A stretch of DNA of 64,000 nucleotides from Hypanus sabinus. Lineage: Eukaryota. The translations under genes were made by a program, and so were the position numbers. Location: the NCBI RefSeq assembly GCF_030144855.1, contig NC_082709.1:140306001-140370000 (forward strand), in the 5' to 3' direction. A model generated the notes under the pieces. It searched no databases, was not told the DNA's origin, and saw nothing but the letters and a program-made list of their open reading frames with translations. Of the stretch, positions 22,300 through 53,764 are shown one piece after another; positions within the stretch are counted from its first letter, which is position 1; every line of letters begins with the position of its first letter.

Positions 22300-23900
22300 T
22301 TTGAATTATTAATTGAAATAACATATTGGCGAATTGTTTAAAAATGGTGCGTGATGGGGGTATTTCATCGTGAAATCCACTGCTGCCCAAAATCCATGAG
22401 CCACCCAAAAGTATACAGGAATGAAATCTTTGTTGACCAGCGGAATCGTTTAGCGACCCCTGTAACTCCAAGCCTTTTGCTTCCCGCGGTACAGACGTAA
22501 ATTAACTGTTCTACAGTTTGAAGTTGTGAACTAATAATGATAACGAAAGTATTGTTCAATGCTCCCTCAGAAGTAAGGAAGTTTTTAATGTGATCGGGTT
22601 TACGAACACACGCACACGTACTCACATTCCTCTATTGATGTAAGTTGAGAAAGGGGCGTGCACGTTACTTCCTTCGAGCAATTTAGTATTCATTTCGGGA
22701 ACTGAAGTAAAAGGCATGTGGGTGTCGGTAATTCTAACAGAGTGTGCGTAAACTGATTCTGGGCCAAATTCACTTTCAAAATAACTTCCCAATAAAGTGC
22801 AGACATCCAGCTGGCTGCGCTCAGTAGAAATAATTTTACGCGGAAAACTAGTTTTACCTTCTACGGCAAATTGGAACCGGATCTTCGAACCGCTTGACAA
22901 TCTACAGATGAAACTGCTTGCGCTCGCTCTGCTGGTCTTTCTGGCCGACGGTGAGAATCATAAAAGTTTTCATTAGCCCAGTATGTTCTGCCGAATGGCT
23001 TAACAGGGTAGGGAAATGGGTAATCGGGGTCTGCTGAGGTTGAGTTGGAAGGGAGGAATGTTAAAGAAAGTGGACTGGTAAGTAATATACAGCCTCACAA
23101 AGGCATGCAAAAAACAACGCGTTTGAATTGTTTGTTGCAAGCAGTTTAATTAAAAAGAATGCGACGGTGTAAAGAGCTGAAATAACAGTAAGTGTATTGA
23201 AAATAATGACTCAAACTGATGCATTCGACATCGGCTTGGCGATTTGTTTCTTTAAAGTGGAGTACGCCAATATATTTGTTCTGCCCTCTGTACCTGGTGC
23301 TCAATTTCGTTGTGGGAAGGTACGTATTCGAAAGGGAGAAGCATTTGCTGGGGCTCGGGGCGAGACCCTGAATGATATGCATTTCTGGAACGTATTACGA
23401 TAAGCATTTCTCTTAGTTTGCCGATTGTCGGGGTTCAGATGGGAGGTTGGACGTGTAGCTTCTTCTTGTCTGTTGCTCAATCGAGCTGATGGACAGAGCA
23501 AATAGGGAAAGTTCTGTCCCAGAATCAAGGTTGCCACAATTTCAGTCAAGTTGTAATGTGCAGGTAGTATTTGTGATTTCCAGATTATTGCTAAGTCGTT
23601 CACTGAAGGAAGTGAGCGAACGAGCCGTATACTAACAACTGCAAAGCTCCACTACCAGCACTGTGCTCCAACAGTAAAGACTTGGGAAAAATGTAATAGT
23701 TACAGTAAATCAAGAGTTATCACGTACTGAAGGCAGGTATTGCTTTCAGTGAACCAGTAGCGCCTTGCTGAGGGAAAGAGTCCCCGAGGATCAGTAAATC
23801 GAATCTGGTGCTGGGTTCCACTGAGACGCAGCGAGCTCTGCCGTCCAGTATAACTCTGAACTACTGACGGCTTACAACAACCACCTCAAAGCCGGGGGGC
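22300..23900. promoter_or_regulatory. CpG-rich island / probable promoter of the CD200-like gene
   Basis: CpG density is visibly high against a CpG-depleted window and the region spans exon 1. GC-box-like GGGGCGTG 22653-22660, ETS cores ACTTCC 22667-22672 and 22784-22789, IRF-like ATTCACTTTC 22768-22777. Confidence 0.6.
22908..22950 (+). CDS. CD200-like: Exon 1 (signal peptide) of CD200/OX-2-like gene
   Basis: ATG AAA CTG CTT GCG CTC GCT CTG CTG GTC TTT CTG GCC GAC G|gtgag encodes MKLLALALLVFLAD with a phase-1 donor. Splicing to 38655 completes an A-D-A signal-peptidase motif. It lies in the CpG-rich island. Confidence 0.85.
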
Positions 23901-23929
23901 GGGGAATAACACCAATATAGTTTTGCAAA

Positions 23930-24420
23930 ATACTTATAAATCCACCAGCAAGGTCCTCTCCTACTCTAATCTCTACAGCTCTGACTGCATTCCAGCAGTT
24001 CTGTTGGACAGGCTACACGATTGGCATGCCGACTACACTCTTTCTGAAACAAACACCCCAATCTACCATGGGAAGAAAGTGTTGGGTGCACAGTGGAAGG
24101 AATTCAATGGTGTTCTCAAGGACATCTCCTTGAAGAAATGCAACACTTCACTTGACCAATGACCACTTCTAGTTGAGAAGGACCATTCAGAATTATTTGA
24201 CAGGAGCAGCTGACAACCTGGTGAAAAAATAGCAGAAGGAGAGCATGGACATCAAACTATCCACCCATCCCAGTAAGCCCTTCCTGCAGAATCAGGAGGT
24301 CCCACAATGGCTTCATAGGCCATATTACATATCAGACCACAGGACCCTCAGAATTTGATCAGAAACAAGCCACCCGCACCCTGAAGGACTGCCTAGAAGA
24401 GAGATGCCATGCTTAGCAAG
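23930..24420 (+). mobile_element. RTE LINE 3' fragment
   Basis: Degenerate post-RT region comparable to 5300-5600 on the opposite strand. Confidence 0.55.
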
Positions 24421-24949
24421 ATTTTATGTTCATACCCTGAATGAAAACTAAGTGTAGTCCATCCCCAAAACTGCAATGCCTGTCCAGGAATTAGCAGTTT
24501 ACGGGCTTAAGGGGGAAGCACCAGGATTTTCATAGATGGGAAATGTTTGAAAATACTTTTTGGGGTTTGCAATTGGGAGTAACAATGGTCTGACTCCAAA
24601 CATTGCCTAAAATTTTGATATCTTTGTGATCTCACATTCAAGTGACTCATTCAACAACAGTATAACCACAAGCCTACATTACCAGACTAGGTTTTATATT
24701 ATTTTTCAAAGCTATCCTTGATAGAGTCACAGAGTCTTTGGCCCATCTTGTCCATGCTAAAACCATTTAAACTTCCTATTCCCATCAACCTGCACTGGGA
24801 CCATAGCCCTCGCTACCCCTACCATCCATGTACCTATCCAAACTTCTCTTAAACAATAAAATCGAGCTCACATGCCCTACGTGCACCGGCATATTCGTTT
24901 GATATCTCTAAGTTTTATACTGAAGCTTTATCGATGAAACCAGGCTTAT

Positions 24950-25440
24950 CACAAAAATTAAATAGATGGATGTATCAAGGTAACAAAAAAAAGCTTGTGT
25001 TGTACACCATTCGTACAGATCAATTTATGACAACAGTGCATTGAGATAAAGCCACAGCAGATTGCAGAATAAAGTGTAGCAATTACAGAGAAAGTCATGT
25101 GCAATTGGACAATAAAGTGCAAGGTTGTAAAGTAGATTGTGAGGTCAAACACCATTCTTATCATGGTAAGGAACTGTTCACTAGTTTTCTAACAGTGGGA
25201 TAGAAGCTTTCCTTGAGCCTAATGGTGTATGCTTTAAGGCTTTTGTATCTTCTACCTGATTGGAGTAATGAAAAGAGAGAATGTCTGAGGTTGATGTGTT
25301 GATCTTTATGCTGGCTTCTATATTGAGGCAGTGAGAAGTGTAGACAGAGTCCATTGAGGGGAAGCTGGTTTCTGTGATGTGCTGAGATATATGCATAGCC
25401 CTCTGCAGTTTCTTGCGGTCATGGACAGAGCCGTGTCAAA
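24950..25440 (-). mobile_element. Rex1/Babar 3' fragment
   Basis: ETSFPSMDSVYTSHCL...SIK Rex1 C-terminal motif plus 3' UTR. Confidence 0.7.
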
Positions 25441-25599
25441 CTACCTCTGATTTTAACTATGTGAAAATGAGATAACAATAAAACAGAACAGTGTATTAGG
25501 AATCTGTAATTAGCTTCTTAATAGATTTAAAGATTATATACTCAAATACATTCATAATTTATTTGTAGCTAAAACAATTGAGTATTCACATTTTGCAAA

Positions 25600-25925
25600 T
25601 AGGACTTTCAATCACTTGGAAAGACAGAATATTTAGGTGGGATCAGTATGGTTTTGTGTATGAGAAATCCTGCCTCACAAATCATATTTTTTGAGACTGA
25701 TGAATTTAAGGCAGTAAATGTTGCATACACAGAATTTTGACAAGGCCCGGCATGAATGGCTGGTCCAGAAAGTTGGGCAACGTGGATCCAGAATTAGTCT
25801 GGTAATGTTTATGATATCTTACTGACTGCAAGTGTGTAATCAGTGGTGTACCACAGGGTGTGTAGATTTACTGACTGAAAGTCACGAAGCAATGGTATAC
25901 CACAGGGTCAGTGCTGGGACCTGAA
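25600..25925 (+). mobile_element. CR1 RT fragment
   Basis: Degenerate HGF...SCLTN, FDKA and GVPQGSVLG-coding DNA. Confidence 0.65.
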
Positions 25926-27654
25926 ATTAACTTTCATTAATGTAGAGAGTATAATGAATTAAAGCTGGAACTACTGATGCTTAGAAAAGTAAAAAATGTT
26001 GTAGAAGTAACAACCTGTTTGGAAGAAGATAATGGTTGATGGTTAAGAAATAAATTTTCAATATTCAGTGCTTGTTAAGAAGCATAAGGGAAATAAAGCA
26101 GGAGAAGAGAATCAATATTCATCTGAAACAATTGAATTAGAATGGAATTGAATGGTGAAAATAGTACTACTTCAGTTGATAACATTTAAAGTGAAGGACT
26201 GAACTTACTTCAAAAGCATCTGATTGGAAACATTAAGGTAAAAGTGTAGCAAGTCATCATGACCCATTCTCAGTCAGTAGTTTTCACTTTTCTTGAAGGA
26301 AATTACTACTTTCGCACTCTCTGTAAAATTTGAGTCCACCCCCCACCCACATAGACACCTGATGTAGTCATGGGTCAGTCCTGACAAGAATTTGGACTGT
26401 CCCAGAGAACTACAGCAACTGTTGGCAGTGGGTAGGGCAGATGTCGTAACAGGTTCATTTTTAATTATTTCATGCTTGGTGAACTTTCTAACTAACTAAA
26501 TTACTTCAATAATATTAACATTTTTGGAACCATAGCAATATTTAGCAGACTCCCAAATTGGAAACTATTGTACGAGGGGGTTTCAGTCTTCCTCATGGGG
26601 ATCAAAATGCAAAATATGAGTGAGAAATTATTGCATCTGAGGGAGAATTTACTGAAATAATGAGACACTAATTTCTGGAATAGAATATTAAGGAACCACA
26701 ACGGGCTTTTACTTTCTTGAAAATGAGGTTGGAACAATAAGCAAAGTCAATGATATCTCACGTACAGTATAGTCCATAAAAATGATGGTAGACACCTGAA
26801 AAATCATTGCTTTATTTTAACAACTGATTTTAAGACATTATGCCAATAAAAGCAGAGATTCTACAGGAAGAGAAACATTTGAGACCAACTGCACAACAAA
26901 GCGATTCTTTTTCTTAAAATTTAACATTAGCTTCTTGTAATTTTTGTATTTCTAAACTGAATTCGGCCAGGTGCTTTGCTCCAAAAGCATGTTCTTTCTT
27001 ATATGGGATCAAAATATTAGTAAATTAACAGATTTTGAAGAAACTAAAAAATGAAATGTAAATGAGAAGTAGTTGTTGCAAATAGTTTAAGTTAATTTCA
27101 TATTGATCTAGAAAGCTGAAAATTACACAATTCAGTGTATGATTTTAAAAATCAATCATTTCTAAAATCCGAGAAATACATAAATTTTAATTATTTGATC
27201 AATTTCAGATTGCATTTGGGTATCAGTTCTGTCAGGAAACATAATTATCTGGGATGAAATTAGCAGTGATAAATGGCTTTTAGGTGAAAAGAGGGGGTGG
27301 AAAGTCATCTTCAGCCAACTGTAAAACTAACTATGAATGAATTAGCAATTTATGTAGCACTGGTTTTATTTTCTATTCACTAGAGAGAACTAGCGCATGA
27401 TAAAAGGGGAAATTTGCCCAAGAATAAGCATAATGGACAAGAATATTAAAGGTTAAAAAAGAAATGTCTTCTGTAAAGGAAAAAGTGGGTTGATGTGAAC
27501 TGGAAATTCACTTCCACAAAAAGTACACAACTAAGCAGACATTGTAAATTCATGGGGTAGATGACATGTGGAGTGCAAGAATAAATTTAATAGTGAAAGT
27601 CTATTTTTCTTTCTCTTTTATATTACAGTAGGTGAAAAGGAGAGATACTGATAA

Positions 27655-28880
27655 CTTCACCTTGCAGTAAAGAATATAGGAAAAATCAATGTATTTAGAT
27701 GTAAAACATCAAAAGATGCCTTTTGGTGGATTGTAAACGCTTCCCAATCATCCAACTTTCCACCTACTTTTGCTACCTTATATGCCCTTTCCTTTGCTAT
27801 TATGCAGTTCTTAATTCCTCTTGTCAGCCATGGTTGCCTATCCCTGCCATTCGAGAATTGCTTCTTCTGTGGGATATCTCTCTCCTGTGCCTTATGAACT
27901 TTTCCCAGAAACTTCAGCCATATCTGCTCTAGCATCATTCCCCACCCCTATCCTTCTCCAATCCAGCTGGGCAAGGTTCTCACTCATGCCTCTGTAATTC
28001 CCTTTATTCCATTGCGATACTGATACATGTAACTTATGCTACTCCCTCTCAAATTGCAGTATGAATTCAATCATATTATTAACACTACTCTTAAGTGTTC
28101 TTTTACATTGAGCTTCCTAATAAGATCTGGGTTATTATACAGCACCTAATCTAAGCCTTCCTCGAATAGGCACAAGCACAAGTTGCTCTAAAATGCCATC
28201 TTGTAGCGTTCAACAAATTCCTCTCTTGTGATCCGATACCAATCTGATTTTCCCAATCCCCTTGCATATTGAAGTCCCCTTTTACAATTGTGTCATTACC
28301 CTTATTATATGCCTTTTCCGGCTCCCATTGCAGTCGCAACCCCACATCTTGGTTACTATTTGGAGGCCTATATATGATTCCCATAATGGATTTTTCACCT
28401 TTGCAGTTTCTTAAGTCCATCCACAAACCTTTGACATTCTCTGACCCTATATCACCTCTTTCTAAAGATATAATTCCATCTCTTACCAACAGAACCACAC
28501 CACCACCTTTGACCTCCTGCCAGTCCTTTTGTTACAAAGTATATCCATTGATGTTAAGCTCCCAACAATGGCCTTCTGTCAGCCACAATTGATGCCCACA
28601 ACATCATACCAACCAATCTCTAATTGCTCCACAAGTTCTTCCACCGTACACCAAATGCTAAGCACATTTTAATATAGTACCTTCAGTACTGCATTTGTTG
28701 GCCTTTTGAATTTTGCCTCTGTTGTCCAATTTAACTCTTTGCTCTGTCTGCAATTGTCCCCAATCATTGACATGTCCTTCCTTACATTCATGTTACATCC
28801 ATCATCTACTTGTAAACCTGCAGGCTCCTCCTCAGCTCTATCATCCTGATTCCCATCCCCCAGCCATATTAGATTAAACC
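27655..28880 (-). mobile_element. CR1 endonuclease / ORF1-ORF2 junction fragment
   Basis: GIIYRPPN and KGDFNMQGDW APE motifs. Confidence 0.85.
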
Positions 28881-29699
28881 AGTACATATGGCAAACAAAG
28901 AATTGTTGAAACTTATTCTGTTGTTATGCTCTGATGTTATACAAAGTCCATAAAAATTACAGCAATGGCAATAGGGTCAATCCATTTGAAATCAGTTTTA
29001 AAACTTACAGTGTAGGAAGATATAAAGCAGCTGCAATGAATTAAATGAGCAATAAACTCTGTAGTTTGCTGTAGGTCACATTCAGGCTCCCAGTTCAGCA
29101 CAAGATTAGGTTCACAAATGAACCATAATAGGAAAGACCATAAGGAAATAGGATGGGTAGGGCAGCATTTGCTCACTGAAGAAAATTAATGTATATGTTG
29201 AATGATTACACATCAAATATACCATGTCAAAATATTGATCCAAGGGCAACCATTGATACATCAACTTGAAAATTCTGCTCCATTAATGTTGCCCTGAAGC
29301 AAGCTATCAACCTTGAGACAATGCAGTTGAAACCAACCTTTGTCATTGATTCTTGCCAAATGCAGGCAACGGGACGAGAAGGGAGGATGCTGGGCTCAGC
29401 ATGACCATTTAGGCTGAACGTTCCGTTTTTATTCTGTATTACACTATGACTTCAATGTACATCAAAGTTATGTGAAAGCTGGTTAGGAGAAGGTAAAACC
29501 AAGGTACTATGGCCTGAAACATTGACTGCTTACTCTCCTCCATAGATATGGCCTAACTTGCTGAGTTCCTCCAGCATTTTCTGCGTGTTTCTCAAGATTT
29601 CTGGCATCTGCAGAATGTGTGGTGTTTCTGAGCAATGCTGCGAATTTTATTGAGGCATATCAGAAAGCTTGTTTGGAAGTTTTACAATACAGAGATGTG

Positions 29700-30200
29700 A
29701 CTGACGAAGATACATCAAGGCAACATTGGGAAGATAGTGTTGATGCAGTTACCATGTGATTAGAGCAGTAAAGTCAGAGCCCCAAGAAAGTGTAAGTAGG
29801 CAGCTGGGGACAGGACAGGCAGAGAGCTGCAAAAAGTATGATGCCACTAAATGTGGAGACCCAGTGAAGTCAGGCCAACCATCAGAAAGATGCTGAATAT
29901 GACAGAGATCAGCAGTGATTCCACCCTCCTCATCATGCATCAAATGCATTCGCAATGAAGATGGCGTTCCTTTATCAGTGGAACAAATACAGAGCCAACA
30001 ACCCAAATATCCAGACGACCTTGTGCTATGAGGCAGACAAATGTTTTAGACTTGCATCTTTACTTTTTGTTTTTCTCTGTTCAAGCAGGGGTGTAACATG
30101 TGGAATATTATGAGACATTAAGAAATTTAAGCGTGACTAACTGCAGGTTACCTACGTGCTTCATTCCAGAAGCTATCAGAGAAACTGAGTGTTTATGTCA
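29700..30200 (+). mobile_element. Rex1/Babar fragment
   Basis: Degenerate pre-RT region joined to the 3' end (RLPTCFIPEAIR). Confidence 0.5.
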
Positions 30201-30819
30201 AGAACATTGTCATTTCCTTTCTATAAATAAAGTACAAGTGTTTGTTAGTTTAAATTGCTGGCTATCCTCCGGTATTCTCTAAATGAGAAGATTTGAAAGT
30301 ACCAAGAAATTGTGGTACTTTCAGACAGAAAGGATTGAGAACAGAACAACAATGTACAATCAGAAAAGCGGAAAGCCGCTTTTGGGGGGATAATTCTTGC
30401 CTCTCAGATGGGAAGCCAGTGAATTCACTTCTGAGATAAACAGAATCAAAGAGAATTTCATAAACTTCCATAATATTTTAGAAGCAAGGGGGGAGCTAGG
30501 AAAAGAGAAAGTCACCTTGGGGGCTAACTGGAAGTCCTTGTGAAGGACCAGCAGATATGTATGGTGTCCTGAATGGATACTTTGTACTAGTGTTAAGCAT
30601 CGTGGAGAGAATGAAAAGTTGAGAATGGTAGCTAATGTTGTTCCATATTCAAGAATGATGATGGGGGCCTTATGTCATTTTATGTGCATTGGTTATACAA
30701 TCAAGACTTCCGATAAATCTGAAACCTATTATTGTACTCAGCAATGGTCTTTTCATGATTACACAAGCAAAACAATTTCCAGTTTCCTGAGCATAAGTTT
30801 CTACAAATGTTAAGGGAAC

Positions 30820-32826
30820 TGGAGATGCAGTTCAATGACCCTCGCTTGGTAAGGGAGAGCGAGGAGGTGATAGAGAGGAGGTGGTCACACCGGGGCCATG
30901 GGAGACAGACAAGTGGGTCATAGCCAGGAGGGGGAAGGGGAAGAGTCAGGTACTAGAGAGTACTCCTGTGAATGTACCCCTTGACAATAAGTACTCCTGT
31001 TTGAGTACTGTTGGGGAGGGACGGCCTACCTGGGGGAAGCGACAGTGGCAGTGCCTCTGGCACAGAGTCCAGCCCTGTGGCTCAGAAGTGTAGGGAAAGG
31101 AAGGGGAAGGCTGTAGTGATAGGGAACTCTATAGTTACCTGTGGACACAGGAAAGAAACTCAGATGGTAGTTTGCCTCCCAGGTGCCCGGGTCCGGGATG
31201 TTTCAGATGGTGTCTAAGATATCCTGCAGTGGGAGGGAGAACAGCCAGAGGTCGTGGTACATATTGGTACCAACGACATAGGTAGGAAAAGGGAAGGAGT
31301 CCTGAAAAAAGACTACAGGGAGTTAGGAAGGAAGTTGAGAAGCAGGACTGCAAAGGTAGTAATCTCAGGATTACTGCCTGTGCCACGCAACAGTAAGTGT
31401 AGGTATAGAATGAGGTGGAGGATAAATGTGTGGCTGAGGGATAGGAGCATGGGGTAGGGATTCAGATTTCTGAACCATTGGGACCTCTTTTGGGGCAGGT
31501 GTGACCTGTACAAAAAGGACAGGTTGCACTTGAATCCTAGGGGGACCAATATCCTGGCAGGGAGGTTTGCTAAGGCTACTGGGGAAAGCTTAACCTAGAA
31601 CTGTTGGGGGTTGGGAACCAATCTGAAGAGACTGGGGAAGAGGAGGTTAGCTCACAAATAGCGAAAGCTTGCAGACAGTGCAAGAGGGAGGATAGGCAGG
31701 TGATAGAGAAGGGATGCGCTCAGACTGAAGGCTTGAGATGCGTCTATTTTAACGCAAGGTGTGTTGTGAACAAAACTGATGAGCTTAGAGCATGGATCAG
31801 TACTTATGATGTGGTCAGACAAGTTAGAAAAGCGTTTAATTGGAGTAAGGGGAATTATGAGCTATCAGGCAAGAAATTAGAAGCTTAAATTGGGAACAGA
31901 TGTTCTCGGGGAAAAGAACAGAAGAAATGTGGCAAATGTTCAGGGGATATTTATGTGGAGTTCTGCATAGGTATGTTCCAATGAGACAGGGAAGTTATGG
32001 TAGGGTGCAGGAACCGTGGTGTACAAAGGCTGCAATAAATCTAGTCAAGAAGAAAAGAAAAGCTTACAAAAGGTTCAGAGAGCCAGGTAATGTTAGAGAT
32101 CTAGAAGATTATAAGGCTAACAGGAAGGAGCTGAAGAAGGGAATTAGGAGAACCAGAAGGGGCCATGAGAAGGCCTTGGTGGGCAGGATTAAGGAAAAGC
32201 CCAAGGCATTCTTCAAGTATGTGAAGAGCAAGAGGATAAGACATGAAAGAATAGGACCTATCAAATATGACAGTGGAAATGTGTGTATGGAACCAGAGCA
32301 AATAGCAGAGGTATTTAATGAATACTTTACTTCAGTATTCACTATGGAAAAAGATCTTGGTGATTATAGTGATGATTTGCAGCAGACTGAAAAGCCAGGG
32401 CATGTAGATATTAAGAAAGAAGATGTGCTGGAGTTTTTGGAAAGCATCAAGTTGGATAAATGACTGGTACCAGATGAGATGTACCCCAGGCAACTGTGGG
32501 GGGCAAGGGAGGAGATTGCTGAGCCTCTGGTGATGATCTTTGCATCATCAATGGGGACGGGAGAGGTTCCAGAGGATTGGAGGGTTGCGGATGGTTGTTC
32601 CTTTATTCAAGAAAGGGAGTAGAGATAGCCCAGGAAATTATAGTCCAGTGAGTCTTACCTCAGTGTTTGGTAAGTTGATGGAGAAGATCCTGAGAGGTAG
32701 GATTTATGAACATTTGGAGAGGTATAATATGATTAGGAATAGTCAGCATGGCTTTGTCAAGGGCAGGTCCTGCCTTATGAGCCTGATTGAATTTTTTGAG
32801 GATGTAACTAAACACATTGATGAAGG
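30820..32826 (+). mobile_element. CR1 LINE with SGNH-esterase ORF1 and internally deleted ORF2
   Basis: VVIGNSIV, CLPGARVRDV, VVHIGTNDIG and LHLN.RG (esterase); YFNAR start of APE; RT up to SCLMSLIEFFEDVTKHIDEG. Confidence 0.92.
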
Positions 32827-33770: not shown

Positions 33771-33826
33771 ACAGGGTGGGATAGGTCTTACTGGCCCTTC
33801 TAGTTGCACTGCCTTGCAAACTCTGA

Positions 33827-34327
33827 CAGAAATCCCACCCTGCAAAAACTCATTTCAGGGAGGTAGCACCATCAATTTGCGGGAGATTCCCAGAATTTCT
33901 GGGAGAGGTGGGATGTCTGCAATACAGTAGCTCCTTAGCAGCTAGCCAGCTAGTTGAAATAACGTTAACTATGCTATAGAACGAATGATACCTGTTAATC
34001 TCACCTCAACATGTCTTTTACATTTTAACCCACCATGGGCAATAGAAAAGTCACTGTTGCAAACAGTGCAGTGAGCAACACTGCCATTATTTTTGACCCC
34101 TATTAGGCAGGGGTACACTTTAGTGTAGTCTGGGATGAGCAACGTTTTTTATTTTCCTTTTTTGGAACACTCTGCCATGGTGGGTTTTTTTCTCTCTCCC
34201 CCTCTCCCCCCTCACTCACTCTCAAACAAACAGATTTCTGGGATATTGTACATAATTTGTAGGCGTCAGGGAGCCACTATCAATATGCGGGAGACTCCCG
34301 GAACTTCTGGGAGAGGTGGGATGTCTG
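33827..34327. mobile_element. Non-autonomous DNA transposon (MITE) with 13-bp TIRs
   Basis: CAGAAATCCCACC ... GGTGGGATGTCTG (12/13 match); ~60-bp internal direct repeat 33857-33919 ~ 34267-34327. Confidence 0.75.
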
Positions 34328-34339
34328 CCCTGACAACCA

Positions 34340-37270: not shown

Positions 37271-37460
37271 GATTACGTTTTTATATGTAACAGGGTGGTA
37301 AGAGGTATAGTCCAGGTAGCCATAAGATTCCATGGGTTTATAATGGACATCAGTAGATACGCTTTCTCCAGAGATAGAGACAGGGAGATTGAGAAAGGGG
37401 TGGGAGGTGTCAGAAATGGACCAGGTAAATTTGAGAGCAGGGTGGAAGTTGGAAGCAAAT
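37270..37460 (-). mobile_element. Penelope RT C-terminal fragment
   Basis: Degenerate DIFYKPTDSHGYLDYTSSH-type coding DNA. Confidence 0.6.
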
Positions 37461-43950: not shown

Positions 43951-44214
43951 TAGACAGGTTCTCTAAAGGCAGAAGGTGGTTAATAATTACCCATAAAGTA
44001 TTAACTGTAGTTTATTAATAATGAAGATTATGGGATTAAAAAGTCACATAAACTATTTAAAATTGCAGAAATGTATAGATGGAACCATAAAATTACAAAA
44101 ATGATATTTACAATTTGAAAAATTACCAAAACCGCAGCAAATAGATCTCACATTTGAATCCTCCATACCTCAGATAAAAATCCTTTACTAGCAGTTTGAG
44201 AGTGAGAAGTTAAA

Positions 44215-46330
44215 ATCAGATGTATTAATATTGCAGTGGAGTAAAGAGAATTACAGAGGCATGAGAGAGGAGCTGCCAAAGCAGATTGGAAAGTGATACT
44301 AGCAGAGGTGACAGCAGAACAGCAATTGGTGGAATTTCTGGAATCAATTCAGAAGTCACTGAATCAATACATCTCAAAGAAGAAGTATTCTAACGGGAGG
44401 ATGAGGCAACTGTGGCTCTCAAGGGAAGGAAAGTGGATGACATCATAAGAGAAAAACAGAAAGTGTATAATACAGGAAAGCTTACTGGGAAGTTAGAGAA
44501 TTGGGAAGGTTTTAAACACCAACTGAAGGCAACTATAAGGAGAGAAAAGTTAAGATATTAAGGTAAGCTGGCCAAAAATATAAAAATGGATACAGAAAGA
44601 TTTTTTTTAATATGTAAAGAGTAAAAGAGAGGCAAGAATGGATATCAGACTGCTGGATAATGAGTCCTGAGATGTCATGGGGCAGAAACAACTGCAGACG
44701 AACTTAAGAAGTATTTTGTTCACTGTGGAAAACACAAGCAGTATGCCAAAAATTTGATAGCGTCAAAAGGCAAGTGTCAGTACAGTTGCTCTTACTGAGG
44801 AGAAACTGAAAGGTTTGAAAGTTGATAAAACAGCTGGACCAGATGGACTAAACCCCAGGGTTCTGAAAATGGTACCTGAAGAGATTGTGGAGGCAGTTTT
44901 AATGACCTTTCATGAATGGTTAGGTTCTAGGATGTTTTCAGAGGACTAGATAATTATAACTCTCTCTCTACTCTTGAAGAAGGGAAATTATAGACCAGTT
45001 AGCCCTACATTAGTGGTTGGAAATATGTTGGAATTCATTATTAAGGAGTCTATTATCTGGAGTACTTGGAAGAATATGGTAAAATAAGCAAAAGTCAGCA
45101 TGGTTTCCTTCAGGGGAAATCTTGCCTGACAAATCTGCTGGGATTCTTTGAGGAAATAACAGCCAAGATAGGGGAAGGAGAGTCAATAGATGTTGTTTAC
45201 TTGGATTTTCATAAGGCCTTTGACAAGGCTGCTAAACAAGATAGAAGGATCTTGTTTATAGGAAAGACAGAAGATTGATTGAAGGCAATAAATTGAGTAG
45301 GATTAAAGGGTGTCTATACTGACTGACTGCCTGGGACTAGCACTGTTCCATAGGGGTCGGTGTTGGGATAACTTTTCACTTGATATATCAATGATTTGGA
45401 GATTGAAAGTGATAGTTTTCTGGCTAAGTTTGCTGATGATACAAAGATAGGTGGAGGGATAGGTACTGTTGAGGAAACGGAGAGAGCAGAAGGATTTGGA
45501 CAAATTAGGAGAATTGGCAAAGAAGTGGCAGATTGATACAGTGTTGGAAAGAGTATGGTCATGCACTTTGGTAGAAGGAATAAAAGTGTAGACTATTTTC
45601 CAAATGGGGAACAAATTCAGAATTTAGAGGTAAAAAGGGACTTGGGAGAACTCATGCAGTGTTCCCAAAAGATTAAATTGCAAGTTGAGTCAGTGGTAAG
45701 GAAGGCAAATGCAGCGTTAGCATTCATTTCAGGAGGACTGCAATATAAAAGTAAGAATGCAAAGTTGAGGCTTTATAAGACATTGGTCAGACTGCACTTG
45801 AAGTATTGTGTACAGTTTTGGGCCACTTATCTATGAGAAGATGTGATGCTATTGGAGACGGTCCAGAGAAGATTCACAAAAATGATCCCAGGAATGAAAG
45901 AATTAATATGAGCAGAGTTTGAAGGCTCTGGGCCAGTACTCACTGGAGTTTAGAAGAATCAATTCCTCTTTCATTGAAACTTATTGAATATTTTAAGTTT
46001 TAGATTGAGCAGACGTTTCCTTGTGCGGGAGTCTAGGCCCAGAGGGCACAGCCTCAAAATAGAGGGATGTCCCTTTAGAACAGTTATAAGGTGGTGAATC
46101 TGTAGAATTCATTGCTACGGACAGCTGTGGAGGCCAAGTCGTTTGGTATATTTAAAGTGGAGAATGATAGGTTCTTGAGTAGTAAGGTCATCAAAGGTTA
46201 CAGGTAGAAGGCAAGTGAATTGGGAGGGATTGGGAGGGATAATAAATCAGCAGTGATAGAATGGTGGAGCAGACTCAATGGACCAAATAGCCTAATTCTG
46301 TTCCTATCCCATATGGACTAATGGCCTTAA
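44215..46330 (+). mobile_element. CR1 LINE, 5'-truncated
   Basis: QHGFLQGKSCLTNL, YLDFHKAFDK, KFADDTKIGG and LVRLHLKYCVQFW, then tail. Confidence 0.92.
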
Positions 46331-46379
46331 TCAATCTATAGAGATTCCAGTTGGAGAGAGTGTGGTACTGACTGAATGA

Positions 46380-48555
46380 GTCAGGGCGGGTGACTGAAGT
46401 AAGTATAGGCGAATGCTTTGGATCTTGTGATCATAATGACATTAATTTCAGGATAATGGTACAGAAGGATAGGACTAGCCCTTGGTTTGAGATTTTAAAC
46501 TGGAGAAAAGCCAATTTTGATGCCATCGGAAAGGATTTGGCAAGTGTGGATTGGGTTAGATTGTCTTCTGTCAAAGGGATCTTTGGTAAAAGGGGGACCT
46601 TCAAAAGTGAAATATTGAGAGTACAGAGTTTGTATGTTCTTTGTAAGAATGAAAGACAAGTCTAACAGGTTTAGGGAACCTTGGTTTCAAAGGATATTGA
46701 GGCCCTGCTTAAGAAGAAGGAGAAGTTGTTGCATACCAAGTATAAGCAGCAAGGGACAAATGAGATGCTTGAAAAGAATAAGGGGGCTGAAAGAAGGCAT
46801 TAGCTTGCTCTGACAGACCATGTGAAGGAGAATCCCAAGGGCTTTTACAGATATATTAAGATCAAAAGGATAGCAACAGACCAAATTAATCCACTTAAGA
46901 TCGGTGAGGTAATTTATACAAAAGAGATTAAGGGTGTGTTAGATCTTAAGTAGAGTTTTTGATTATTTATTCTCTCTGGAGATGGATGCAGAGATTATAG
47001 AACTGAGACAAAACATTAGTGAATTCATAGACTGTATCTGAATTACAGAGAAGGACGTGCTTGCTGCCTTGAGGAAAATTGTGCTAGATAATTCCCAGGG
47101 CCTGATAAGGTGTCCTCTTGGTCCATATGCGAGGCCAGTGCAGAAATTGCAGAGACCCTGCCAGAGGTAGTTAAAGCATCCTTAGCCACAGGTGAGGGGC
47201 TGGAGGATAGCTAATGTTGTTCCATTGTTCAAGAAAGGCTCTTGGAATAAGCCAGGAAATTATAGGCTAATGAACCTGACCTGAATAGTGGGTGAATTAT
47301 AGGAAGGTATTGTAAGAGAATGGATATACGTGTGAGTATTTGGATAGCCAGGGCCTTTGACAAGGTCTGGCATAGAAGGCTGGTCCAGAAGTATCAGTTG
47401 CTTGGCATTAGACCATAAGGGTATTAGATGTGAGAATACAATTAGGCCATTCAGTCCATCGAGTCTGCTCTAGCATTTCAACATGGCTGATCCCAGATCC
47501 CATTCAACCCCATACACCTGCCCTCTCACTATATCCCTTGATGCCCTGACCAATCAGGAATCTATCAGCTTCTGCTTTAAATATACCCAAGAATTGGCCT
47601 CAACTGCAGTCTGTGGCAGAGCATTCCACAGACTCGCCACTCTCTGGCTGAAAAAATCCCTCCTTTCAGGATGAAATAGTAAATTGGATTCAAGGTTGAC
47701 TTTGCAGAAGAAGCCAGGGTAGATGGTTACCTCTCTGACTGGAGGTCTGTTACTGGCGGTGTGCTGTAGAGATTAATGCTGGGTCCGTTGTTCTTTGTCA
47801 TCTAAATGATCTGGATGATAAAGTGGCAAACTGGATCAGCAAATCTGTGGATAACATTAAGAATGTGAGCATAGTGGACAGTAAAGAAGGTTATCAAAGC
47901 CTACAGTGGGATGTATAAAAGCTGGAAAAAAATGGGCTGAAAATGGCAGATGAAATTAATGCAGACAAGTGTGAGGTGTTGCATGTTGGGGTGGTCAAGT
48001 AGGGTTGGATATACACAGTAGGGCACTGAGGAGTGTGGTAGGAAAAAAGGATCTGAGAATTCAAATGTTGAAAGTAGTGTCACATGTAAATAGGGTCGTA
48101 AAGAGAGCTTTTGGCATGCTGGCTTTAATAAATGAAAGTACTGAATACAGGAGTTGGTATGTTATGTTTAAGTTGCATGAGATGTTGTTGAGGCCAAATT
48201 TGGAGTACTGTATGAAGTTCAGGTCACTTACCAACAGGAAAGATATCAATAAGATTGAAAGAGAACAAAAAAACATATTACGAGGATGCTACGGTGACTT
48301 GATGATCTGAGTTACGGGTACAGGTTGAGTAGGTTAGTACTTTCTCCGGGCCTGTAGGAAAATAAGGGAAGGTATGAAAGAGCTATACAAAATTATGAGA
48401 TTCATAGATATGGTAAGTGAAAGCAGGCTTTTTTCCACGGAAGTTAGGCAAGACTAGAAGTAGAGGTTATATGTTAAGGCTGAAAGGCGAAATATTTAAG
48501 GGAACTTGAGGGAGATGTTCTTCACTCAGAGTGGGGGGGGGGGGAGAGAGAGAGA

Positions 48556-48602
<47 letters not shown>

Positions 48603-48790
48603 GAGCTTCTAGCAGAAGTAGTGGATTTCAACATTTAATAGTAGTTTGGATAAGCATATGGATAGGAGGGGTACAGAGGGCTATGGTCCAGGTGCAGGTT
48701 GTGGGAACTAGGCAGAATGACAGTTTGGCACAGGGTTGATGGGCCAAATGGCCTGTTTCTGTACTTTAGTGCTCTGTGACTCTATGACTA
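46380..48790 (+). mobile_element. Fragmented CR1 LINE with nested CR1 tail (~47410-47670)
   Basis: GECFGSCDHNDINF APE end; LRPNLEYCMKF; 3' tail. Confidence 0.85.
48531..48598. repeat. Compound G-run / (GA)n / (GT)n microsatellite
   Basis: Seen directly. Confidence 0.95.
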
Positions 48791-49989
48791 AGCTATGGAA
48801 ATCCTTAATTGGATTAGTACAGAGGTAGTGTGAGCAATTCTGGGTGCCACACCTTGAAAATAATGTATTGACCTTTAGTAGAATGCACCATAAGTTTACC
48901 GAAATCATACATGAACAAGAAATTCACTAGAATTTACACAAACGATGTTGTGTTATCTAAAACTTAGAAAGTTAAGCTATGATTTGATCAAAACTTCCAT
49001 GCTAATAATGGGAATTCATGGGGAAAATAGAGTGCAGCTACACGTGGCATGTTCTAAACAATTAGGGGTCCTTTCAGAAGTGAAGTTAGGAAATGCATCC
49101 ATACGCAAAGATATTGTGATATCATTTTATAAAAATCATGCGTTCTTTGGTTTATTTTAAGTTATAAGCCAATAGATAAACATGGTCATCCGTTTAAATG
49201 CCAGAAAAGCTCGGGAGGCTACTGATGTTCCCATGTCGCTTAGTTCAGTGCTCTGGTTGAAGTCTCCTGAATAAAGGGAACTTCACCTGGAAGTGTAGGC
49301 AGTGGAAGAAGTTCTCAGTATCATGTTGAGCTTGAAATGATTGCAATATAGAAATGGGTGGTTGAAGCTGAGGCCTTTGCTGAGGATGGACTATTCAAGG
49401 TCTCAAAGGAGAAGCTGAAGATCTGAAGAAAAGATGTAAGGCAGCATCTACTGAAGAAATGGAAGGACCAGGAGCTTGAACTTCATTCAAGAGTCATTTT
49501 CTTGACTTTTATTTGGTTTTACTCTCGTGTAAGCTCCTTAGACTAAAACTGAAACTCTGATTTTTGTCTTTGCTACCTGACCTGCTGAGAATCTGCATCA
49601 TCATTTAACCTCATTTTAGATTCAGAGCATCTGCAGTATCTTGTTTCAGCTGCTTGAAACCCCAGAATCATATGGCAAGCATGGAGCTTGCTTCCCCGCG
49701 CTGTCTGAAAAGTATGACATGTTCTTCAGCTGAAGCGTTGGTTTTAAAAGTATTCTATGAAGAGCAGATGTGTCAAGCAGCAATCTTCTTAGAGGTTCTA
49801 GGTGGATGTATCATTTTGTCATTTATTGGTAGACACAAAATTTCATCTCAACCAACTGCGTACATGGTTATTATCATGCTTTGTCTCCAAGAAGTTTCCT
49901 TAACTATCAAAATCACACAGTTGCTGTCTGAGGCTTTGGAAGCTGTCCAATAAATACAACACTTTGACTCACTTTCATCAATACCAGGG

Positions 49990-50368
49990 CAGATGGAACT
50001 TAGCAGCCGTGCCTGACAGCTTATCTACGAGAAGGGAAACTCTGATCTCAAACCTCTGCTGCCTTCCAGGTATAACCCCTGATGGGGAAGGTTTTGGGAA
50101 TAAACTCCAAGAAAATTTCGGAGCTGGGATCTCTAATGCAACCCTATGCTGTGTTCAATATTGACTGGCAACTCTGGCAGTGCTATTCCTGTTATCAAAC
50201 CGTATTAGTCTCTGCCGTTCCTGTAAGTTCAACAGCCACTTGGAGAGAGGGGGCCTGCTGCATGAACAACAGCTTGTTCTCCATATTGTACTGTCCTGGC
50301 TTGCTTATCAACTATGTTGATAGCTAGGATGCGACATCCATGGTCATTCTCAACCAGTGGAGGCCCTC
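49990..50368 (+). repeat. Unclassified interspersed repeat (copy 1 of 3)
   Basis: Homologous to 53765-54317 (-) and 58255-58535 (+). Confidence 0.75.
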
Positions 50369-50504
50369 ACATCAGTGAAGGAAATAGAAATTCATCTTGA
50401 AGAATAACCCAACTGCCCTGGGCATTTGCAAACTTTGGGTATCAGCCTCTATAATCTTTGAAAGATCTTGCAGAAAAGCAATATTTCAGGCATATCCTTT
50501 ATGA

Positions 50505-51300
50505 CAAATGCACAGGGTCAAGTAAAGTAAGAGCAGTAGGTCATTCAGCCTTTCTGTGCCTTCTCCACCATTCCATACAAACTCAGCTGATCATTATCTT
50601 AATATCAGATTCCCGCTCTCTCCCAATACCTTTAATGCCTTTTGCATTAAGAATTTTCTTTCTCTACTAAAATATATTTATGACTTTTCCTGTATAGCCC
50701 TTCATGCTGGTGGATTCCACAGGTTCATCATCTTCTGAGTGAAGAAATGTTTCCTCATCTCAGTTTCAAGTGCCTCACCCCTTATGCTGAGACTGGAACT
50801 CCGTACAGCCCACAGCCAAGAACACATTCTTGCTTGCAGTCTATTTTGCCTTGTCAGATTTCTTATTATTCTGCTGAACTACCATGGATACAAACATAGT
50901 TCACCTAATATCTCCTCATTACATTAACCTTCACTGCACTCCCTCTGTGGCAAGTGTATCGTTTCTTAGTTGAGGAAACCCAAAACTGTACACAAGGTTC
51001 TAAGCGCAGTTTCACCAAGGTCTTGTATAATTGTATCAGGGCATCCTTGTTCCTGTATTCTATCCTCTTGCTTTCAAGGCTAAAATACTTTGCAGTCTTA
51101 AATACTTGCTGCATTTAGTTGATACTTTCTGTAATTGGTGTACAAGGATACCTAAGTTTCTTTCTACCTCGACACCTCCCAATCTAAAACCATTTAACAT
51201 GTCTTTCTGTTTTCTTGCTGAATGGAAAACATGTCCATATTATACCACACCTAGTAAGATACTGTCCACTCGCTCCATCAACTTCAGCTGCCCTGAAGCC
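50505..51300 (-). mobile_element. CR1 3' fragment
   Basis: LYKTLVKLRLEPCVQFWVS motif and tail. Confidence 0.8.
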
Positions 51301-52771
51301 TCTTTGCATCCTCCCAGCAACGTGGTTCAGTTTCACCAGCTTACTCTGAAATGTTATGTTTGGTTTCTCACCCAATATGTTAATATACATGGCGCCTGGC
51401 ATTCTGAAGTCCCACTTATTACGAGGAAGGGTACTTTATTTGTAACATTAACTGGCGTCTCTTTCTACAGATTTTGCTTGACTGGCTATGATCTTCCAGC
51501 ATTTCTATTTTTGTTTCAGATTACAGCATTCACCAGTTTATTTGCTTTCCATCCATTTATTCCTGTTCTGTTTCCTGTATACTTATTTGTACCAATACAA
51601 TGTTCCCAGTACATATTAAACGCTTTTTAAGGACCAGATGCATCACATCCACTGATTTTCCCCTTATCAATCCTAACAGCTACATTCTCAAAACCTCCAG
51701 TGGGTTTGTCAAACATAATTGACCTTCCAAAAATATGTGTTGACTGTAATCCCATTCATATTTTCCAAGTATTCTGATATCCGTTTCTTTTTAATTGTAT
51801 CTATCATTTCCCTCATAACTAATGTTAGGCTAAGCTGTCTGCACGTTCATGCTTCACCTCTTTGTTTTTTTACCAATATTCATTTCCTTCTTTGGTCATA
51901 CCTCAGAATCAAGGACAACTTGCTTCTGCTTCATCTTTATAGATTCCAGCATGACAAATGTGTGGGAACCAGCAACTCCTACAGTTGGAGCAGGAGGTAG
52001 CTTATGGGATGGTCAAGCAGTCATTGGGATCAGAAGGTCACACAGCATTTGAGGGGGAGAGAAAGAAACACATTTAATGTTTCAGGTCACAGACCTTGAA
52101 GTCAGAACAGCAAGGGAGAGAAAGTATATATTAAATTATGGGATGGAGTAGGGGAGGGCTTATTGGATAGGACAACAAATTTTACAACTTGTGTCACTGA
52201 CAATAAATCTGATTCTGACAAAGATTATATCTCTGAAAGGGTGATGCGCTATTGATCAACTGGAAACTACATAATCGAGTTGATGAGTTAATGGAAACTT
52301 TAGGGAGAGAAATAACATGGTCCTTTTCTCAATAAAATTATGAAATGTTGACAGTAAAGAGAGTGAGACACAGACAAAGGAAGATAAATGTCAAAAACTG
52401 AAGGGCTGCAGAATATACTTGCCAGATCAGATTGTACTGAGAGAGAAAAACTGATTCCATATCACAGATGGATAGATGACCCATTAATTTCAACTCCCTC
52501 TGGTTTTGAAACTCAACTCTTGAATTTCAAAATCACTCTACATATTTCTCCACTCTTCACTTGCCTCTGATTCCATATCTCCTGCCAGTTCAATTTTATG
52601 CTGTTTACATCATCCCTTCTGAACTTGTCCTCTTTTTTTCCCTAATGGTCAATCATGAGCAAAAATGCTAGTTAAACATCCTTCTTTCCATTAGACTAAT
52701 TAATTGCAATTTCAACAGAGAGCACCAAATTTCAACATAAAACCAGCTGCAATTTCTTGAAATTCCTTTGA

Positions 52772-53020
52772 TCCTTACATACTGTTTGGGTCAAATTTGA
52801 CCCATTTTGACATTTGACAGTGGTGAAAACACCCTAAATGCCATTTTTTAAAGCTGAAATATGATGACTTTTCCTAAAGTGACACAAAATGTGCAAAAAT
52901 GAAAATATTTTAAAATTTTGCACAGGTGCTACAAATTTTTGTACTTTGAGGCTGTACTGGGTCAAATTTGACCCATATCTATTAAAATGGATTTTAAATC
53001 TCTGAAACATTAATTAAGGA
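52772..53020. mobile_element. piggyBac-like MITE
   Basis: TTGA|TCCTT ... AAGGA|TTAA ends; two perfect GGGTCAAATTTGACCC palindromes (52788-52803, 52959-52974). Confidence 0.65.
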
Positions 53021-53377
53021 TTAATCACCCATTTATTAATGTCAGATAGGCTATTTACACATTCTAAATAGATTTGTGGTTCAAAATTTGGTATAGACAT
53101 TTGTTATGAGGGAATTCTTGGGCCAGGTCTAAACGGACCCAGACCTTACTGTGAAGGTATAGAATATGACCAGTATGTAAGGGTAGAGAAGTTTCAAATT
53201 GCCAGGAAAATGTCAGAGGAAACGAACATGCTCTGTGTGTTTCAGAAAAAGAATAGCATTTCACAGTCTTCCAGACTTAACAGTAATCTGAATCCAAACT
53301 TACTAATTCTGCAAATGAAAATAAAAAGGTTAATCTGGTATTTTCAATTAATTAATACTTCTTTTTTTGCTTTTCAG

Positions 53378-53454
53378 CACGTGCATCACAATTTAGATCA
53401 GAACATTATTTTTGGATTATTTTAGGACCACTGGCAATTTTAATTGTTTTTTAA
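53378..53454 (+). CDS. CD200-like: Exon 4, membrane-anchor exon of CD200-like gene (in-frame TAA at 53452-53454 as assembled; exon runs to donor at 53498)
   Basis: Acceptor ctttttttgcttttcag. The phase-1 reading gives (A)RASQFRSEHYFWIILGPLAILIVF*. Strong donor AG|gtaagg at 53498/53499. Confidence 0.8.
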
Positions 53455-53764
53455 TTTTCTGTTTCCACTGGAATAAGAACACAAGATGCTAAAAAAAGGT
53501 AAGGAAATTATTTTTTTTTTGCACAGAATTACAAATTTAATGCCGACTGCTAAAGGGAGACATTTTTAGTATGTTTTTGACAGGTTCTTTTCCCATCATA
53601 TTTCAGTTGAAAAAAGTTTGTGTAACAGCTCACTGGAAGTTGAATTATTGATGACAGTGTGGCAAGGTCCAATTATTGATGATAGTGTGGCTAGTAAAAA
53701 TTCAGATAGTGAAATAATACAAGGAAGTAAAAAAAAGTGAACTCAAGTCAAACTGGAGGAGGTA

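What the first reader, a model, noticed from the sequence alone, without database searches (positions are those of the whole stretch)
22908..53498. CD200-like gene with a V-V ectodomain instead of V-C2
Seen: SP, IgV, IgV and anchor exons splice in phase 1 into a 261-aa product (introns 15.7, 2.4 and 11.7 kb). I found no C2 exon in the non-repeat parts of intron 3. Established: mammalian CD200 and CD200R are V-C2, whereas V-V is the CD226 layout, and CD200, TIGIT, CD96 and nectin-3 are linked relatives. Inference: a lineage-specific CD200-family receptor or ligand in a cartilaginous fish, with no signalling tail in any reading I can derive.
Basis: partly seen in the sequence, partly recalled or inferred. 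Interest (0 to 1): 0.75.

Follow-up and report, generated by a model that had tools for sequence, protein, structure and literature searches.

The report
Stingray CD200 gene with two V domains
This is a real, already auto-annotated stingray gene of the CD200 immune-checkpoint family in which the usual second (C2) domain exon has been replaced, at the same place in the gene, by a copy of the first (V) domain exon, a change shared by rays and many sharks but not described in the papers I could search.

Summary
Four phase-1 exons (22908-22950, 38655-38990, 41354-41683, 53378-53498) splice into a 261-aa product. It is identical to RefSeq XP_059824193.1, 'OX-2 membrane glycoprotein-like' of Hypanus sabinus, so the gene model already exists. 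Both Ig exons are V-set. No C2 exon is found in the window or in the sawfish locus.

V-V models occur in at least ten batoid species and many galeomorph sharks. Skate transcript contigs join V1, V2 and anchor exactly at the window's exon borders. Squalomorph sharks and the chimaera keep V-C2-TM. In Heptranchias the C2 exon sits where batoid V2 sits, and there is no second V.

A V-domain tree pairs V1 with V2 within batoids and within galeomorphs. The AU test against one V2 clade gives p 0.003, or 0.047 without Heterodontus. So either two independent replacements or concerted evolution occurred.

Both V exons are under purifying selection. V1 keeps the binding motifs and batoid V2 has lost them. 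All batoid models end in a 14-15-residue hydrophobic tail, which looks like a GPI signal (inferred).

Verdict: a new variant of a known kind, of moderate interest. The same scan's notes s1-178228 and s1-178250 cover V1 and the anchor exon of this window.

The parts
22691..22950 (+). Exon 1: 5'UTR plus signal-peptide coding part. CDS is 22908-22950 (MKLLALALLVFLAD plus the first base of the next codon).
   Evidence: ATG and donor read. Skate mRNA contigs align to 22691-22809 and 22887-22957. The 5' limit is a minimum.
22951..38654 (+). Intron 1 (15.7 kb), rich in LINE/RT fragments
   Evidence: ORF list. Collinear blocks with Pristis.
38655..38990 (+). V1 exon, phase 1-1: CD200-type V-set domain with the extra Cys pair and the AX6G and TFP motifs
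   Evidence: Pfam V-set 7.6e-14. 48-58% identical to the single V of Callorhinchus, Heptranchias and Pristiophorus. dN/dS 0.34 against Pristis. Motifs.
38991..41353 (+). Intron 2 (2.4 kb). In the sawfish (Pristis) orthologue, the first part of this intron is homologous to the V-to-C2 intron of Heptranchias.
   Evidence: Pristis 20195-21904 is collinear with Heptranchias 19401-20381. No TM-like segment in this intron, and four SP-like candidates, all weaker than the annotated signal exon.
41354..41683 (+). V2 exon, phase 1-1: diverged duplicate V-set domain occupying the position of the C2 exon
   Evidence: Pfam V-set 3.5e-10. 44% identical to V1. dN/dS 0.45. Keeps GCYxC and the G-strand Cys but lacks AX6G at the homologous position and lacks TFP.
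41684..53377 (+). Intron 3 (11.7 kb), with no C2 exon or remnant
   Evidence: tblastn and profile HMM negative. Skate mRNA joins V2 directly to the anchor exon.
53378..53498 (+). Anchor exon. It codes ...ARASQFRSEHYFWIILGPLAILIVF and stops at TAA 53452-53454. The 44 nt after the stop are a relic of the shark TM end and KKRR stop-transfer in the -1 frame. The donor follows 53498.
   Evidence: Every batoid model whose C-terminus I read ends at the same point. dN/dS 0.19. Skate mRNA continues past the equivalent donor into a 3'UTR exon not found in the window.

Best explanation
The locus is the Hypanus sabinus member, probably the pro-orthologue, of the CD200 (OX-2) family. The ancestral chondrichthyan gene was SP / V / C2 / TM(+short tail), as still seen in the chimaera and in squalomorph sharks. 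In batoids a duplicate of the phase-1-1 V exon came to occupy the position of the C2 exon, and the C2 exon was lost. The mature protein therefore has two V domains. V1 is the conserved, ligand-type binding domain. V2 is a faster-evolving copy that has lost the binding-face motifs. It most likely serves as the membrane-proximal stalk that keeps the two-domain height of the molecule. In the batoid stem a one-base frameshift in the T-rich part of the TM exon cut the anchor to a 14-15-residue hydrophobic C-terminus preceded by a small-x-small motif. The product is therefore most likely GPI-anchored and has no cytoplasmic tail. Like mammalian CD200 it would act as a non-signalling ligand for a CD200R-like receptor on another cell. 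What is shown: the exon structure, identity to the RefSeq model, V-V splicing in a related batoid's mRNA, absence of C2, positional replacement, and purifying selection. What is inferred: the ligand role, the stalk role of V2, and the GPI anchor.
For: The product is identical to XP_059824193.1. V-V models without PF08205 occur in Hypanus, Hemitrygon, two Mobula species, Pristis, Narcine, Leucoraja, Amblyraja and Rhinoraja, and in many galeomorph sharks. Skate Logan contigs of 1.2-1.7 kb carry the whole ORF. They map to 38990|41354 and 41683|53378 without extra sequence. The Heptranchias locus has SP, one V, C2 at 21107-21409 and TM, with no second V. Its V-to-C2 intron is collinear with Pristis intron 2. 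There is no C2 in the window, Pristis or Rhincodon. The CD200-type cysteines align with mouse CD200 chain 4BFI_B, whereas nectin-3 lacks them. The closest relatives named by their sources are OX-2/CD200 of Callorhinchus (RefSeq NP_001279700), Latimeria and Amia. dN/dS is 0.34, 0.45 and 0.19 for V1, V2 and anchor. Batoid V1 is 79% and V2 70% mean pairwise identical, and V2 lacks AX6G and TFP. The AF2 model shows two V-type sandwiches, and the top fold matches are CD226, JAML and scFv.
Against: No synteny test was possible, since no neighbouring gene lies in the window or within 10 kb in Pristis or Hemitrygon. One-to-one orthology with mammalian CD200 is not shown: tetrapods carry at least two tandem paralogues, and the tree has no nectin or CD226 outgroup. 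No CD200R-like partner was looked for in elasmobranchs. The GPI anchor rests on rule-of-thumb features only. PDB E-values for nectin-3 (6e-16), CD200 (2e-14) and CD226 (2e-13) are close together.
Confidence: 0.72

Rival explanations
1. Single ancient origin. The elasmobranch ancestor already had V-V (or V-V-C2). Batoids and galeomorphs inherited V2, squalomorphs lost it, and gene conversion between the V exons makes V1 and V2 look like within-lineage sisters.
For: V2 lies 1.9-2.4 kb after V1 in both lineages. Both Pristis and Rhincodon lose alignment with the Heptranchias intron at nearly the same point (about 20381 and 20431). Heterodontus V1 and V2 are 89% identical, which shows that conversion or very recent duplication does occur. 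V-V-C2 forms exist in newts and a teleost. The AU test without Heterodontus is only borderline (p 0.047).
Against: The tree pairs V1 with V2 within batoids (90/69) and within galeomorphs (93/84). The AU test with all rows rejects one V2 clade (p 0.0034). Heptranchias has no V2 remnant although its introns still align with those of batoids. The sequences just upstream of V2 do not align between Pristis and Rhincodon.
Confidence: 0.3
2. It is a separate CD226-like or nectin-like receptor or adhesion molecule rather than a CD200-type ligand, as some RefSeq names suggest.
For: The V-V ectodomain matches the CD226 layout and CD226 is the top fold match. Nectin-3 is the best PDB sequence hit. V1 keeps the AX6G and TFP motifs typical of the PVR/nectin/TIGIT group.
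Against: The extra Cys pair is shared with CD200 and absent from nectin-3. Gene structure, signal peptide, V and TM are collinear with the V-C2-TM 'OX-2-like' genes of squalomorph sharks. The nearest relatives in the protein searches that carry a source name are mostly called OX-2. There is no cytoplasmic tail, hence no CD226-type tyrosine or serine motif. There is no third Ig domain as in nectins.
Confidence: 0.1
3. V1 and V2 are alternative exons or belong to two genes, or the locus is a decaying pseudogene, and the 261-aa product is an annotation artefact.
For: Both V exons are phase 1-1, so either could be skipped. Short isoform models exist (Mobula hypostoma 191 aa and 140 aa; Hemitrygon X2 without the anchor).
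Against: Skate mRNA contigs from several runs contain V1, V2 and anchor in one ORF. Intron 2 holds no TM-like exon, and its four SP-like candidates are all weaker than the annotated signal exon. The ORF is intact in every batoid model retrieved, and dN/dS is below 0.5 in each exon.
Confidence: 0.04

Closest known systems
CD200 (OX-2 membrane glycoprotein) of mammals, Latimeria, Amia and Callorhinchus
   Same: Signal peptide, then an N-terminal V-set domain with the canonical disulfide plus the extra GCYxC...xCL cysteine pair. Each domain is one phase-1 exon. There is a single membrane anchor and no signalling motif. The V domain is 48-58% identical to the V of chimaera and squalomorph CD200.
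   Different: The membrane-proximal domain is a second V-set domain instead of C2-set. In batoids the anchor is a truncated hydrophobic C-terminus (GPI-signal-like) rather than a TM plus about 19-aa tail. V1 keeps the TFP and AX6G motifs, which mouse CD200 has partly lost.
CD226 (DNAM-1)
   Same: A two-domain V-V ectodomain, the best structural match (Foldseek E 1e-16), and membership of the same nectin/PVR/CD200 superfamily.
   Different: CD226 has a TM and a signalling cytoplasmic tail and lacks the CD200-type cysteine pair. Sequence similarity is lower than to CD200-named proteins. The V-V layout here arose by a separate, later exon duplication.
Squalomorph shark 'OX-2 membrane glycoprotein-like' genes (Heptranchias perlo XP_067848935.1, Pristiophorus japonicus)
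   Same: Orthologous by signal peptide, V, TM and tail sequence and by collinear introns. The exon order and spacing are the same.
   Different: They carry a C2 exon where the stingray carries V2, and they have a full TM plus a KKRR tail.
IgSF molecules with GPI-anchored forms (CD48, CD58 GPI isoform, NCAM-120). From general knowledge, not tested here.
   Same: A short C-terminal hydrophobic segment preceded by small residues and no cytoplasmic residues.
   Different: For the stingray protein the GPI anchor is only inferred. It arose by a frameshift inside a former TM exon rather than by an alternative exon.

Membership tests
CD200 (OX-2) family | N-terminal V-set Ig domain with the canonical Cys pair plus the extra F-strand/G-strand Cys pair (GCYxC ... 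xCL) | tested here: met
   Pfam V-set. The alignment to mouse CD200 4BFI_B shows both extra cysteines conserved, while nectin-3 lacks them. These cysteines are invariant in the 17 batoid and galeomorph V-V sequences of alignment A3, in V1 and V2, and are also present in the squalomorph and chimaera V domains checked.
CD200 (OX-2) family | Membrane-proximal C2-set domain (V-C2 ectodomain) | tested here: not met
   No C2 exon in the window, Pristis or Rhincodon. Skate mRNA joins V2 directly to the anchor. The second domain is V-set.
CD200 (OX-2) family | Single-pass anchor with a short tail that lacks signalling motifs | tested here: inconclusive
   There is no tail at all. The C-terminal hydrophobic stretch is only 14-15 residues. 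Sharks have a full TM plus a short KKRR tail. This fits 'non-signalling' but not a classical TM.
CD200 (OX-2) family | Orthology with recognised CD200 genes | tested here: inconclusive
   Collinear exon and intron structure with the Heptranchias V-C2-TM gene. All chondrichthyan V domains form one clade with Callorhinchus CD200 (98/94). The closest relatives named by their sources are OX-2. There is no synteny and no nectin or CD226 outgroup, and tetrapods have at least two paralogues.
CD200 (OX-2) family | Binds a CD200R-type receptor through the V domain | not testable with these tools
   Needs binding assays. No elasmobranch CD200R was sought.
CD226 (DNAM-1) | V-V ectodomain | tested here: met
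   Two V-set domains. CD226 is the top Foldseek hit.
CD226 (DNAM-1) | TM plus a cytoplasmic tail with phosphorylatable Tyr/Ser signalling motif | tested here: not met
   The protein ends inside the hydrophobic segment.
Nectin / PVR family | V-C2-C2 three-domain ectodomain and an afadin-binding tail | tested here: not met
   Only two Ig exons, both V, and no tail. The similarity is limited to the V domain motifs.
GPI-anchored IgSF proteins | C-terminal signal: small omega and omega+2 residues, a 5-10-residue polar spacer, and a 12-20-residue hydrophobic end with no charged tail | tested here: inconclusive
   The pattern A-R-A / SQFRSEHY / FWIILGPLAILIVF is conserved (A-H-A, D-G-S) in all batoid models whose C-terminus I read. 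No GPI predictor or assay was available.

The most novel reading that the evidence does not exclude
The CD200 checkpoint ligand swapped its C2 domain for a duplicated V domain twice independently, once in the batoid stem and once in galeomorph sharks, at the same exon position. Batoids then turned the transmembrane anchor into a GPI signal by a one-base frameshift that has been kept for more than 200 million years. This would be a case of convergent domain replacement in a conserved immune ligand.
Probability: 0.4. Interest if true: 0.65.

Novelty: new variant of a known kind. Interest (0 to 1): 0.5.

Why it matters
CD200-CD200R is a conserved inhibitory checkpoint. Its two-domain V-C2 ligand is usually taken as fixed across jawed vertebrates. 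This locus, with its relatives, shows that the membrane-proximal C2 domain can be replaced by a second V domain while the gene stays under purifying selection for hundreds of millions of years. The replacement may have happened twice, and the anchor type may have switched from TM to GPI. That gives a natural experiment on what the second domain of such ligands is for: height and spacing, or specific contacts. It also warns that the current RefSeq names for these genes (CD226-like, nectin-1-like, nectin-3, OX-2-like) are inconsistent. It is not a new kind of system, and the gene model itself was already predicted.

Tried and rejected
There is no Hypanus transcript evidence.
- DNA of the Hemitrygon and Scyliorhinus torazame loci was not delivered because the files were too large. 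Heptranchias isoform X2 was not on record, but isoform X1 worked.
- A C2-only protein search found only squalomorph sharks. That search has low sensitivity, so I did not use it as proof of absence.
- Literature searches for CD200 with 'cartilaginous fish', 'shark', or 'teleost' plus 'evolution' returned nothing on domain architecture.
- Synteny: no neighbouring gene lies in the window or in the 10-kb flanks. The N-terminal 345 aa of the Mobula fusion model P0013 had no Pfam hit and no match in the window.
- Programmed -1 frameshifting or slippage at the T run before the stop was considered and rejected. The T run is T6 in Hypanus and skate but interrupted in Pristis. The post-stop segment differs by 1-nt and 7-nt indels among batoids, and the -1 frame stops at different places.
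- A shared duplication breakpoint between batoids and galeomorphs could not be tested, because the V2-proximal intron sequences do not align.
- I looked for an exon encoding the LQII end of Hemitrygon isoform X2 in the window and found none.
Full report
**What is in the sequence**

- Exon 1 has its ATG at 22908 and its donor after 22950.
- V1 is 38655-38990.
- V2 is 41354-41683.
- The anchor exon starts at 53378, has a TAA stop at 53452-53454 and a donor after 53498.

Spliced together they give 261 aa. This is letter-for-letter P0170 = XP_059824193.1, 'OX-2 membrane glycoprotein-like [Hypanus sabinus]'. Both Ig exons are V-set by Pfam (7.6e-14 and 3.5e-10). An AlphaFold2 model built on 17 orthologues (mean pLDDT 76) shows two V-type sandwiches. 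Its best structural matches are V-V molecules: CD226, JAML and scFvs.

**Is there a hidden C2 exon?**

I searched the whole 64-kb window, repeats included.
- tblastn used C2-bearing relatives from sawshark, chimaera, teleost and newt.
- A C2 profile from 12 species was run over all six-frame ORFs with HMMER filters off.
- Nothing scored better than E = 1, while the V profile found exactly the two V exons.
- The same C2 profile finds the Heptranchias C2 exon at E 1.9e-32, so the method works.
- The sawfish locus (L001) and the whale-shark locus (L005) also lack C2.

**Are V1 and V2 really joined?**

Indirect evidence is strong.
- V-V models of 259-316 aa exist in Hypanus, Hemitrygon, two Mobula species, Pristis, Narcine, Leucoraja, Amblyraja and Rhinoraja.
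- V-V models of 272-298 aa exist in Heterodontus, Carcharodon, Cetorhinus, Mustelus, two Scyliorhinus species, Stegostoma, Rhincodon, Chiloscyllium and Hemiscyllium (same calls).
- The skate protein cluster contains seven Logan contigs of 1.2-1.7 kb that carry the complete ORF. Contigs that short can only be spliced mRNA.
- Two of these contigs (L002, L003) map onto the window with junctions at 38990|41354 and 41683|53378 and no extra sequence. They continue past the equivalent of the 53498 donor into a 3'UTR that is not in the window.
- Intron 2 holds no TM-like exon, and its four SP-like candidates are all weaker than the annotated signal exon.
- Between Hypanus and Pristis, dN/dS is 0.34 (V1), 0.45 (V2) and 0.19 (anchor). 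The exons are 83-88% identical in DNA, against roughly 64-85% (mostly 67-77%) for the blocks of flanking and intronic DNA that align.

The locus is therefore a functional gene, and both V exons are coding.

**What it is related to**

- The closest relatives that carry a source name are called OX-2/CD200. V1 is about 50% identical to the RefSeq-curated (NP_) Callorhinchus CD200, to Latimeria CD200 and to Amia CD200.
- Against solved structures, nectin-3 (6e-16), mouse CD200 (2e-14) and CD226 (2e-13) are all close, so E-values alone do not decide.
- The alignment does decide. V1 and V2 both have the extra cysteine pair (GCYxC ... KTCL) that mouse CD200 has and nectin-3 lacks.
- No CD200R chain appeared at E <= 0.01.

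**The key comparison**

Squalomorph sharks (Pristiophorus P0182, Heptranchias P0280) and the chimaera have the classical SP-V-C2-TM-tail protein. Their signal peptide, V, TM and KKRR tail closely resemble those of the galeomorph V-V proteins.

The Heptranchias locus (L004) has:
- the SP exon at 10001-10096;
- one V exon at about 19041-19400;
- C2 at 21107-21409;
- TM at 30291-30398;
- no second V or relic of one.

Its V-to-C2 intron is collinear with the first 1.7 kb of the sawfish V1-to-V2 intron and with the whale-shark one. The spacing SP-V-X-TM is the same in all. Batoid and galeomorph V2 therefore occupies the slot of the C2 exon. This is an in-place domain replacement in the CD200-family gene, not an added paralogue. 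In a profile search with V-C2 forms, no batoid or galeomorph protein with a C2-set domain appeared among the 120 listed hits of 938.

**One origin or two?**

- In a maximum-likelihood tree of 54 V domains, all chondrichthyan V domains form a clade (98/94).
- Batoid V1 (100/99) and batoid V2 (100/100) are each monophyletic and pair with each other (90/69).
- Galeomorph V1 and V2 pair with each other (93/84).
- Forcing all V2 into one clade is rejected with p-AU 0.0034.
- Without Heterodontus, whose V1 and V2 are 89% identical, the test is borderline at p-AU 0.047.
- Within-species V1/V2 identity is 42-50% in batoids and 59-89% in galeomorphs.
- The whale-shark V2 copy still carries about 50 nt of the intron upstream of V.

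These results favour two separate duplications, an old one in batoids and a younger one in galeomorphs. One ancient event followed by gene conversion is not excluded. The V2-proximal introns do not align between sawfish and whale shark, so breakpoints could not settle the question. V duplication is recurrent in this family: newts and a teleost have V-V-C2-TM. What is special to batoids and galeomorphs is the loss of C2.

**How it probably works**

- V1 is the conserved domain: 79% mean identity among batoids, against 70% for V2.
- V1 keeps the C-strand ILQVTW, AX6G and TFP motifs of the nectin/PVR/CD200 binding face.
- Batoid V2 has lost AX6G at the homologous position and has lost TFP. It carries more N-glycosylation sequons and sits on a longer branch.

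From this I infer that V1 binds the partner and V2 acts as the stalk that preserves a two-domain height.

The anchor exon codes ARASQFRSEHY-FWIILGPLAILIVF and then stops. Every batoid model whose C-terminus I read (five orders) ends at the same residue, whereas sharks continue with IFIFSFNWYKKRR. In the -1 frame the 44 nt after the stop still read:
- IFCFHWNKNTRC* in Hypanus;
- IFCFNWNKKRRCKK in Pristis;
- RFYFHWNKRK* in skate.

This is a relic of the shark TM end, so a one-base frameshift in the batoid stem truncated the TM. Indels of 1 and 7 nt among batoids in that stretch argue that it is no longer translated. A 14-15-residue hydrophobic C-terminus with a small-x-small motif 8-10 residues upstream and no charged tail is the pattern of a GPI signal. 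That is an inference, and it agrees with the scan's own note s1-178250. With no tail in batoids and only a short KKRR tail in sharks, the protein is best read as a non-signalling ligand, as CD200 is.

**What remains open**

- Hypanus transcripts.
- Synteny.
- One-to-one orthology with mammalian CD200. Tetrapod models show at least two tandem paralogues, and my tree has no nectin or CD226 outgroup.
- Whether a CD200R-like partner exists in elasmobranchs.
- The GPI anchor.
- Single versus double origin of V2.

Three literature searches found no description of this architecture, though the library is limited to open-access papers.

**Verdict**

The gene model is already in RefSeq under inconsistent names. 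The in-place C2-to-V replacement, its phylogenetic pattern and the batoid anchor change appear undescribed. I rate it a new variant of a known kind with moderate interest.

Noticed in passing
window 53455-53498; L001 29273-29332; L002 1166-1205: The 44 nt between the stop codon and the donor of the anchor exon keep, in the -1 frame, a recognisable relic of the shark TM end plus the KKRR stop-transfer sequence. Batoids differ there by 1-nt and 7-nt indels, so the stretch looks untranslated. Its DNA conservation is nevertheless as high as in the coding part.
   Followed up: partly
window 22866-22907: The sequence just upstream of the ATG is open in frame and reads ...EPLDNLQ. The same residues appear in N-terminally extended models of Leucoraja and, in closely similar form, of Narcine and several sharks. 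Skate transcripts start their ORF about 55 codons further upstream. The true start codon may differ between species.
   Followed up: no
P0171 (Hemitrygon isoform X2), P0172 and P0009 (Mobula hypostoma), P0013 (Mobula birostris): Alternative models exist. One is a form without the anchor, ending CLTVIGLQII, and may be secreted. Others lose part of V2. A 486-aa fusion model carries a second, slightly different V1-V2 copy, which hints at a duplicated locus in Mobula.
   Followed up: no
P0005 (Heterodontus), L005 15960-18601 (Rhincodon): Galeomorph V1 and V2 are 59-89% identical within a species, and the squalomorph V is closer to galeomorph V2 than to V1. In sharks the N-terminal V is thus the faster-evolving copy, the opposite of batoids.
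   Followed up: partly
P0016, P0244 (newts), P0012 (Anoplopoma), P0021 and P0206 (ostrich, gecko): Other vertebrates show V-V-C2-TM CD200-like models. Sauropsids show fused models of two tandem V-C2-TM genes. V-exon duplication and tandem gene duplication are recurrent in this family.
   Followed up: partly
window 12023-14501 (+), 27657-28498 (-), 31604-32830 (+), 45066-45836 (+), about 48558: Upstream of the gene lie retrotransposon-type ORFs (gypsy-like, 12023-14501). Introns 1 and 3 hold LINE RT and endonuclease fragments and a (TG)n run. No host exon was recognised among them.
   Followed up: no
window vs L001, whole length: Much of the locus, introns included, aligns between stingray and sawfish in blocks of mostly 67-77% identity. 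Evolution is slow enough that conservation alone does not mark exons in this genome.
   Followed up: partly
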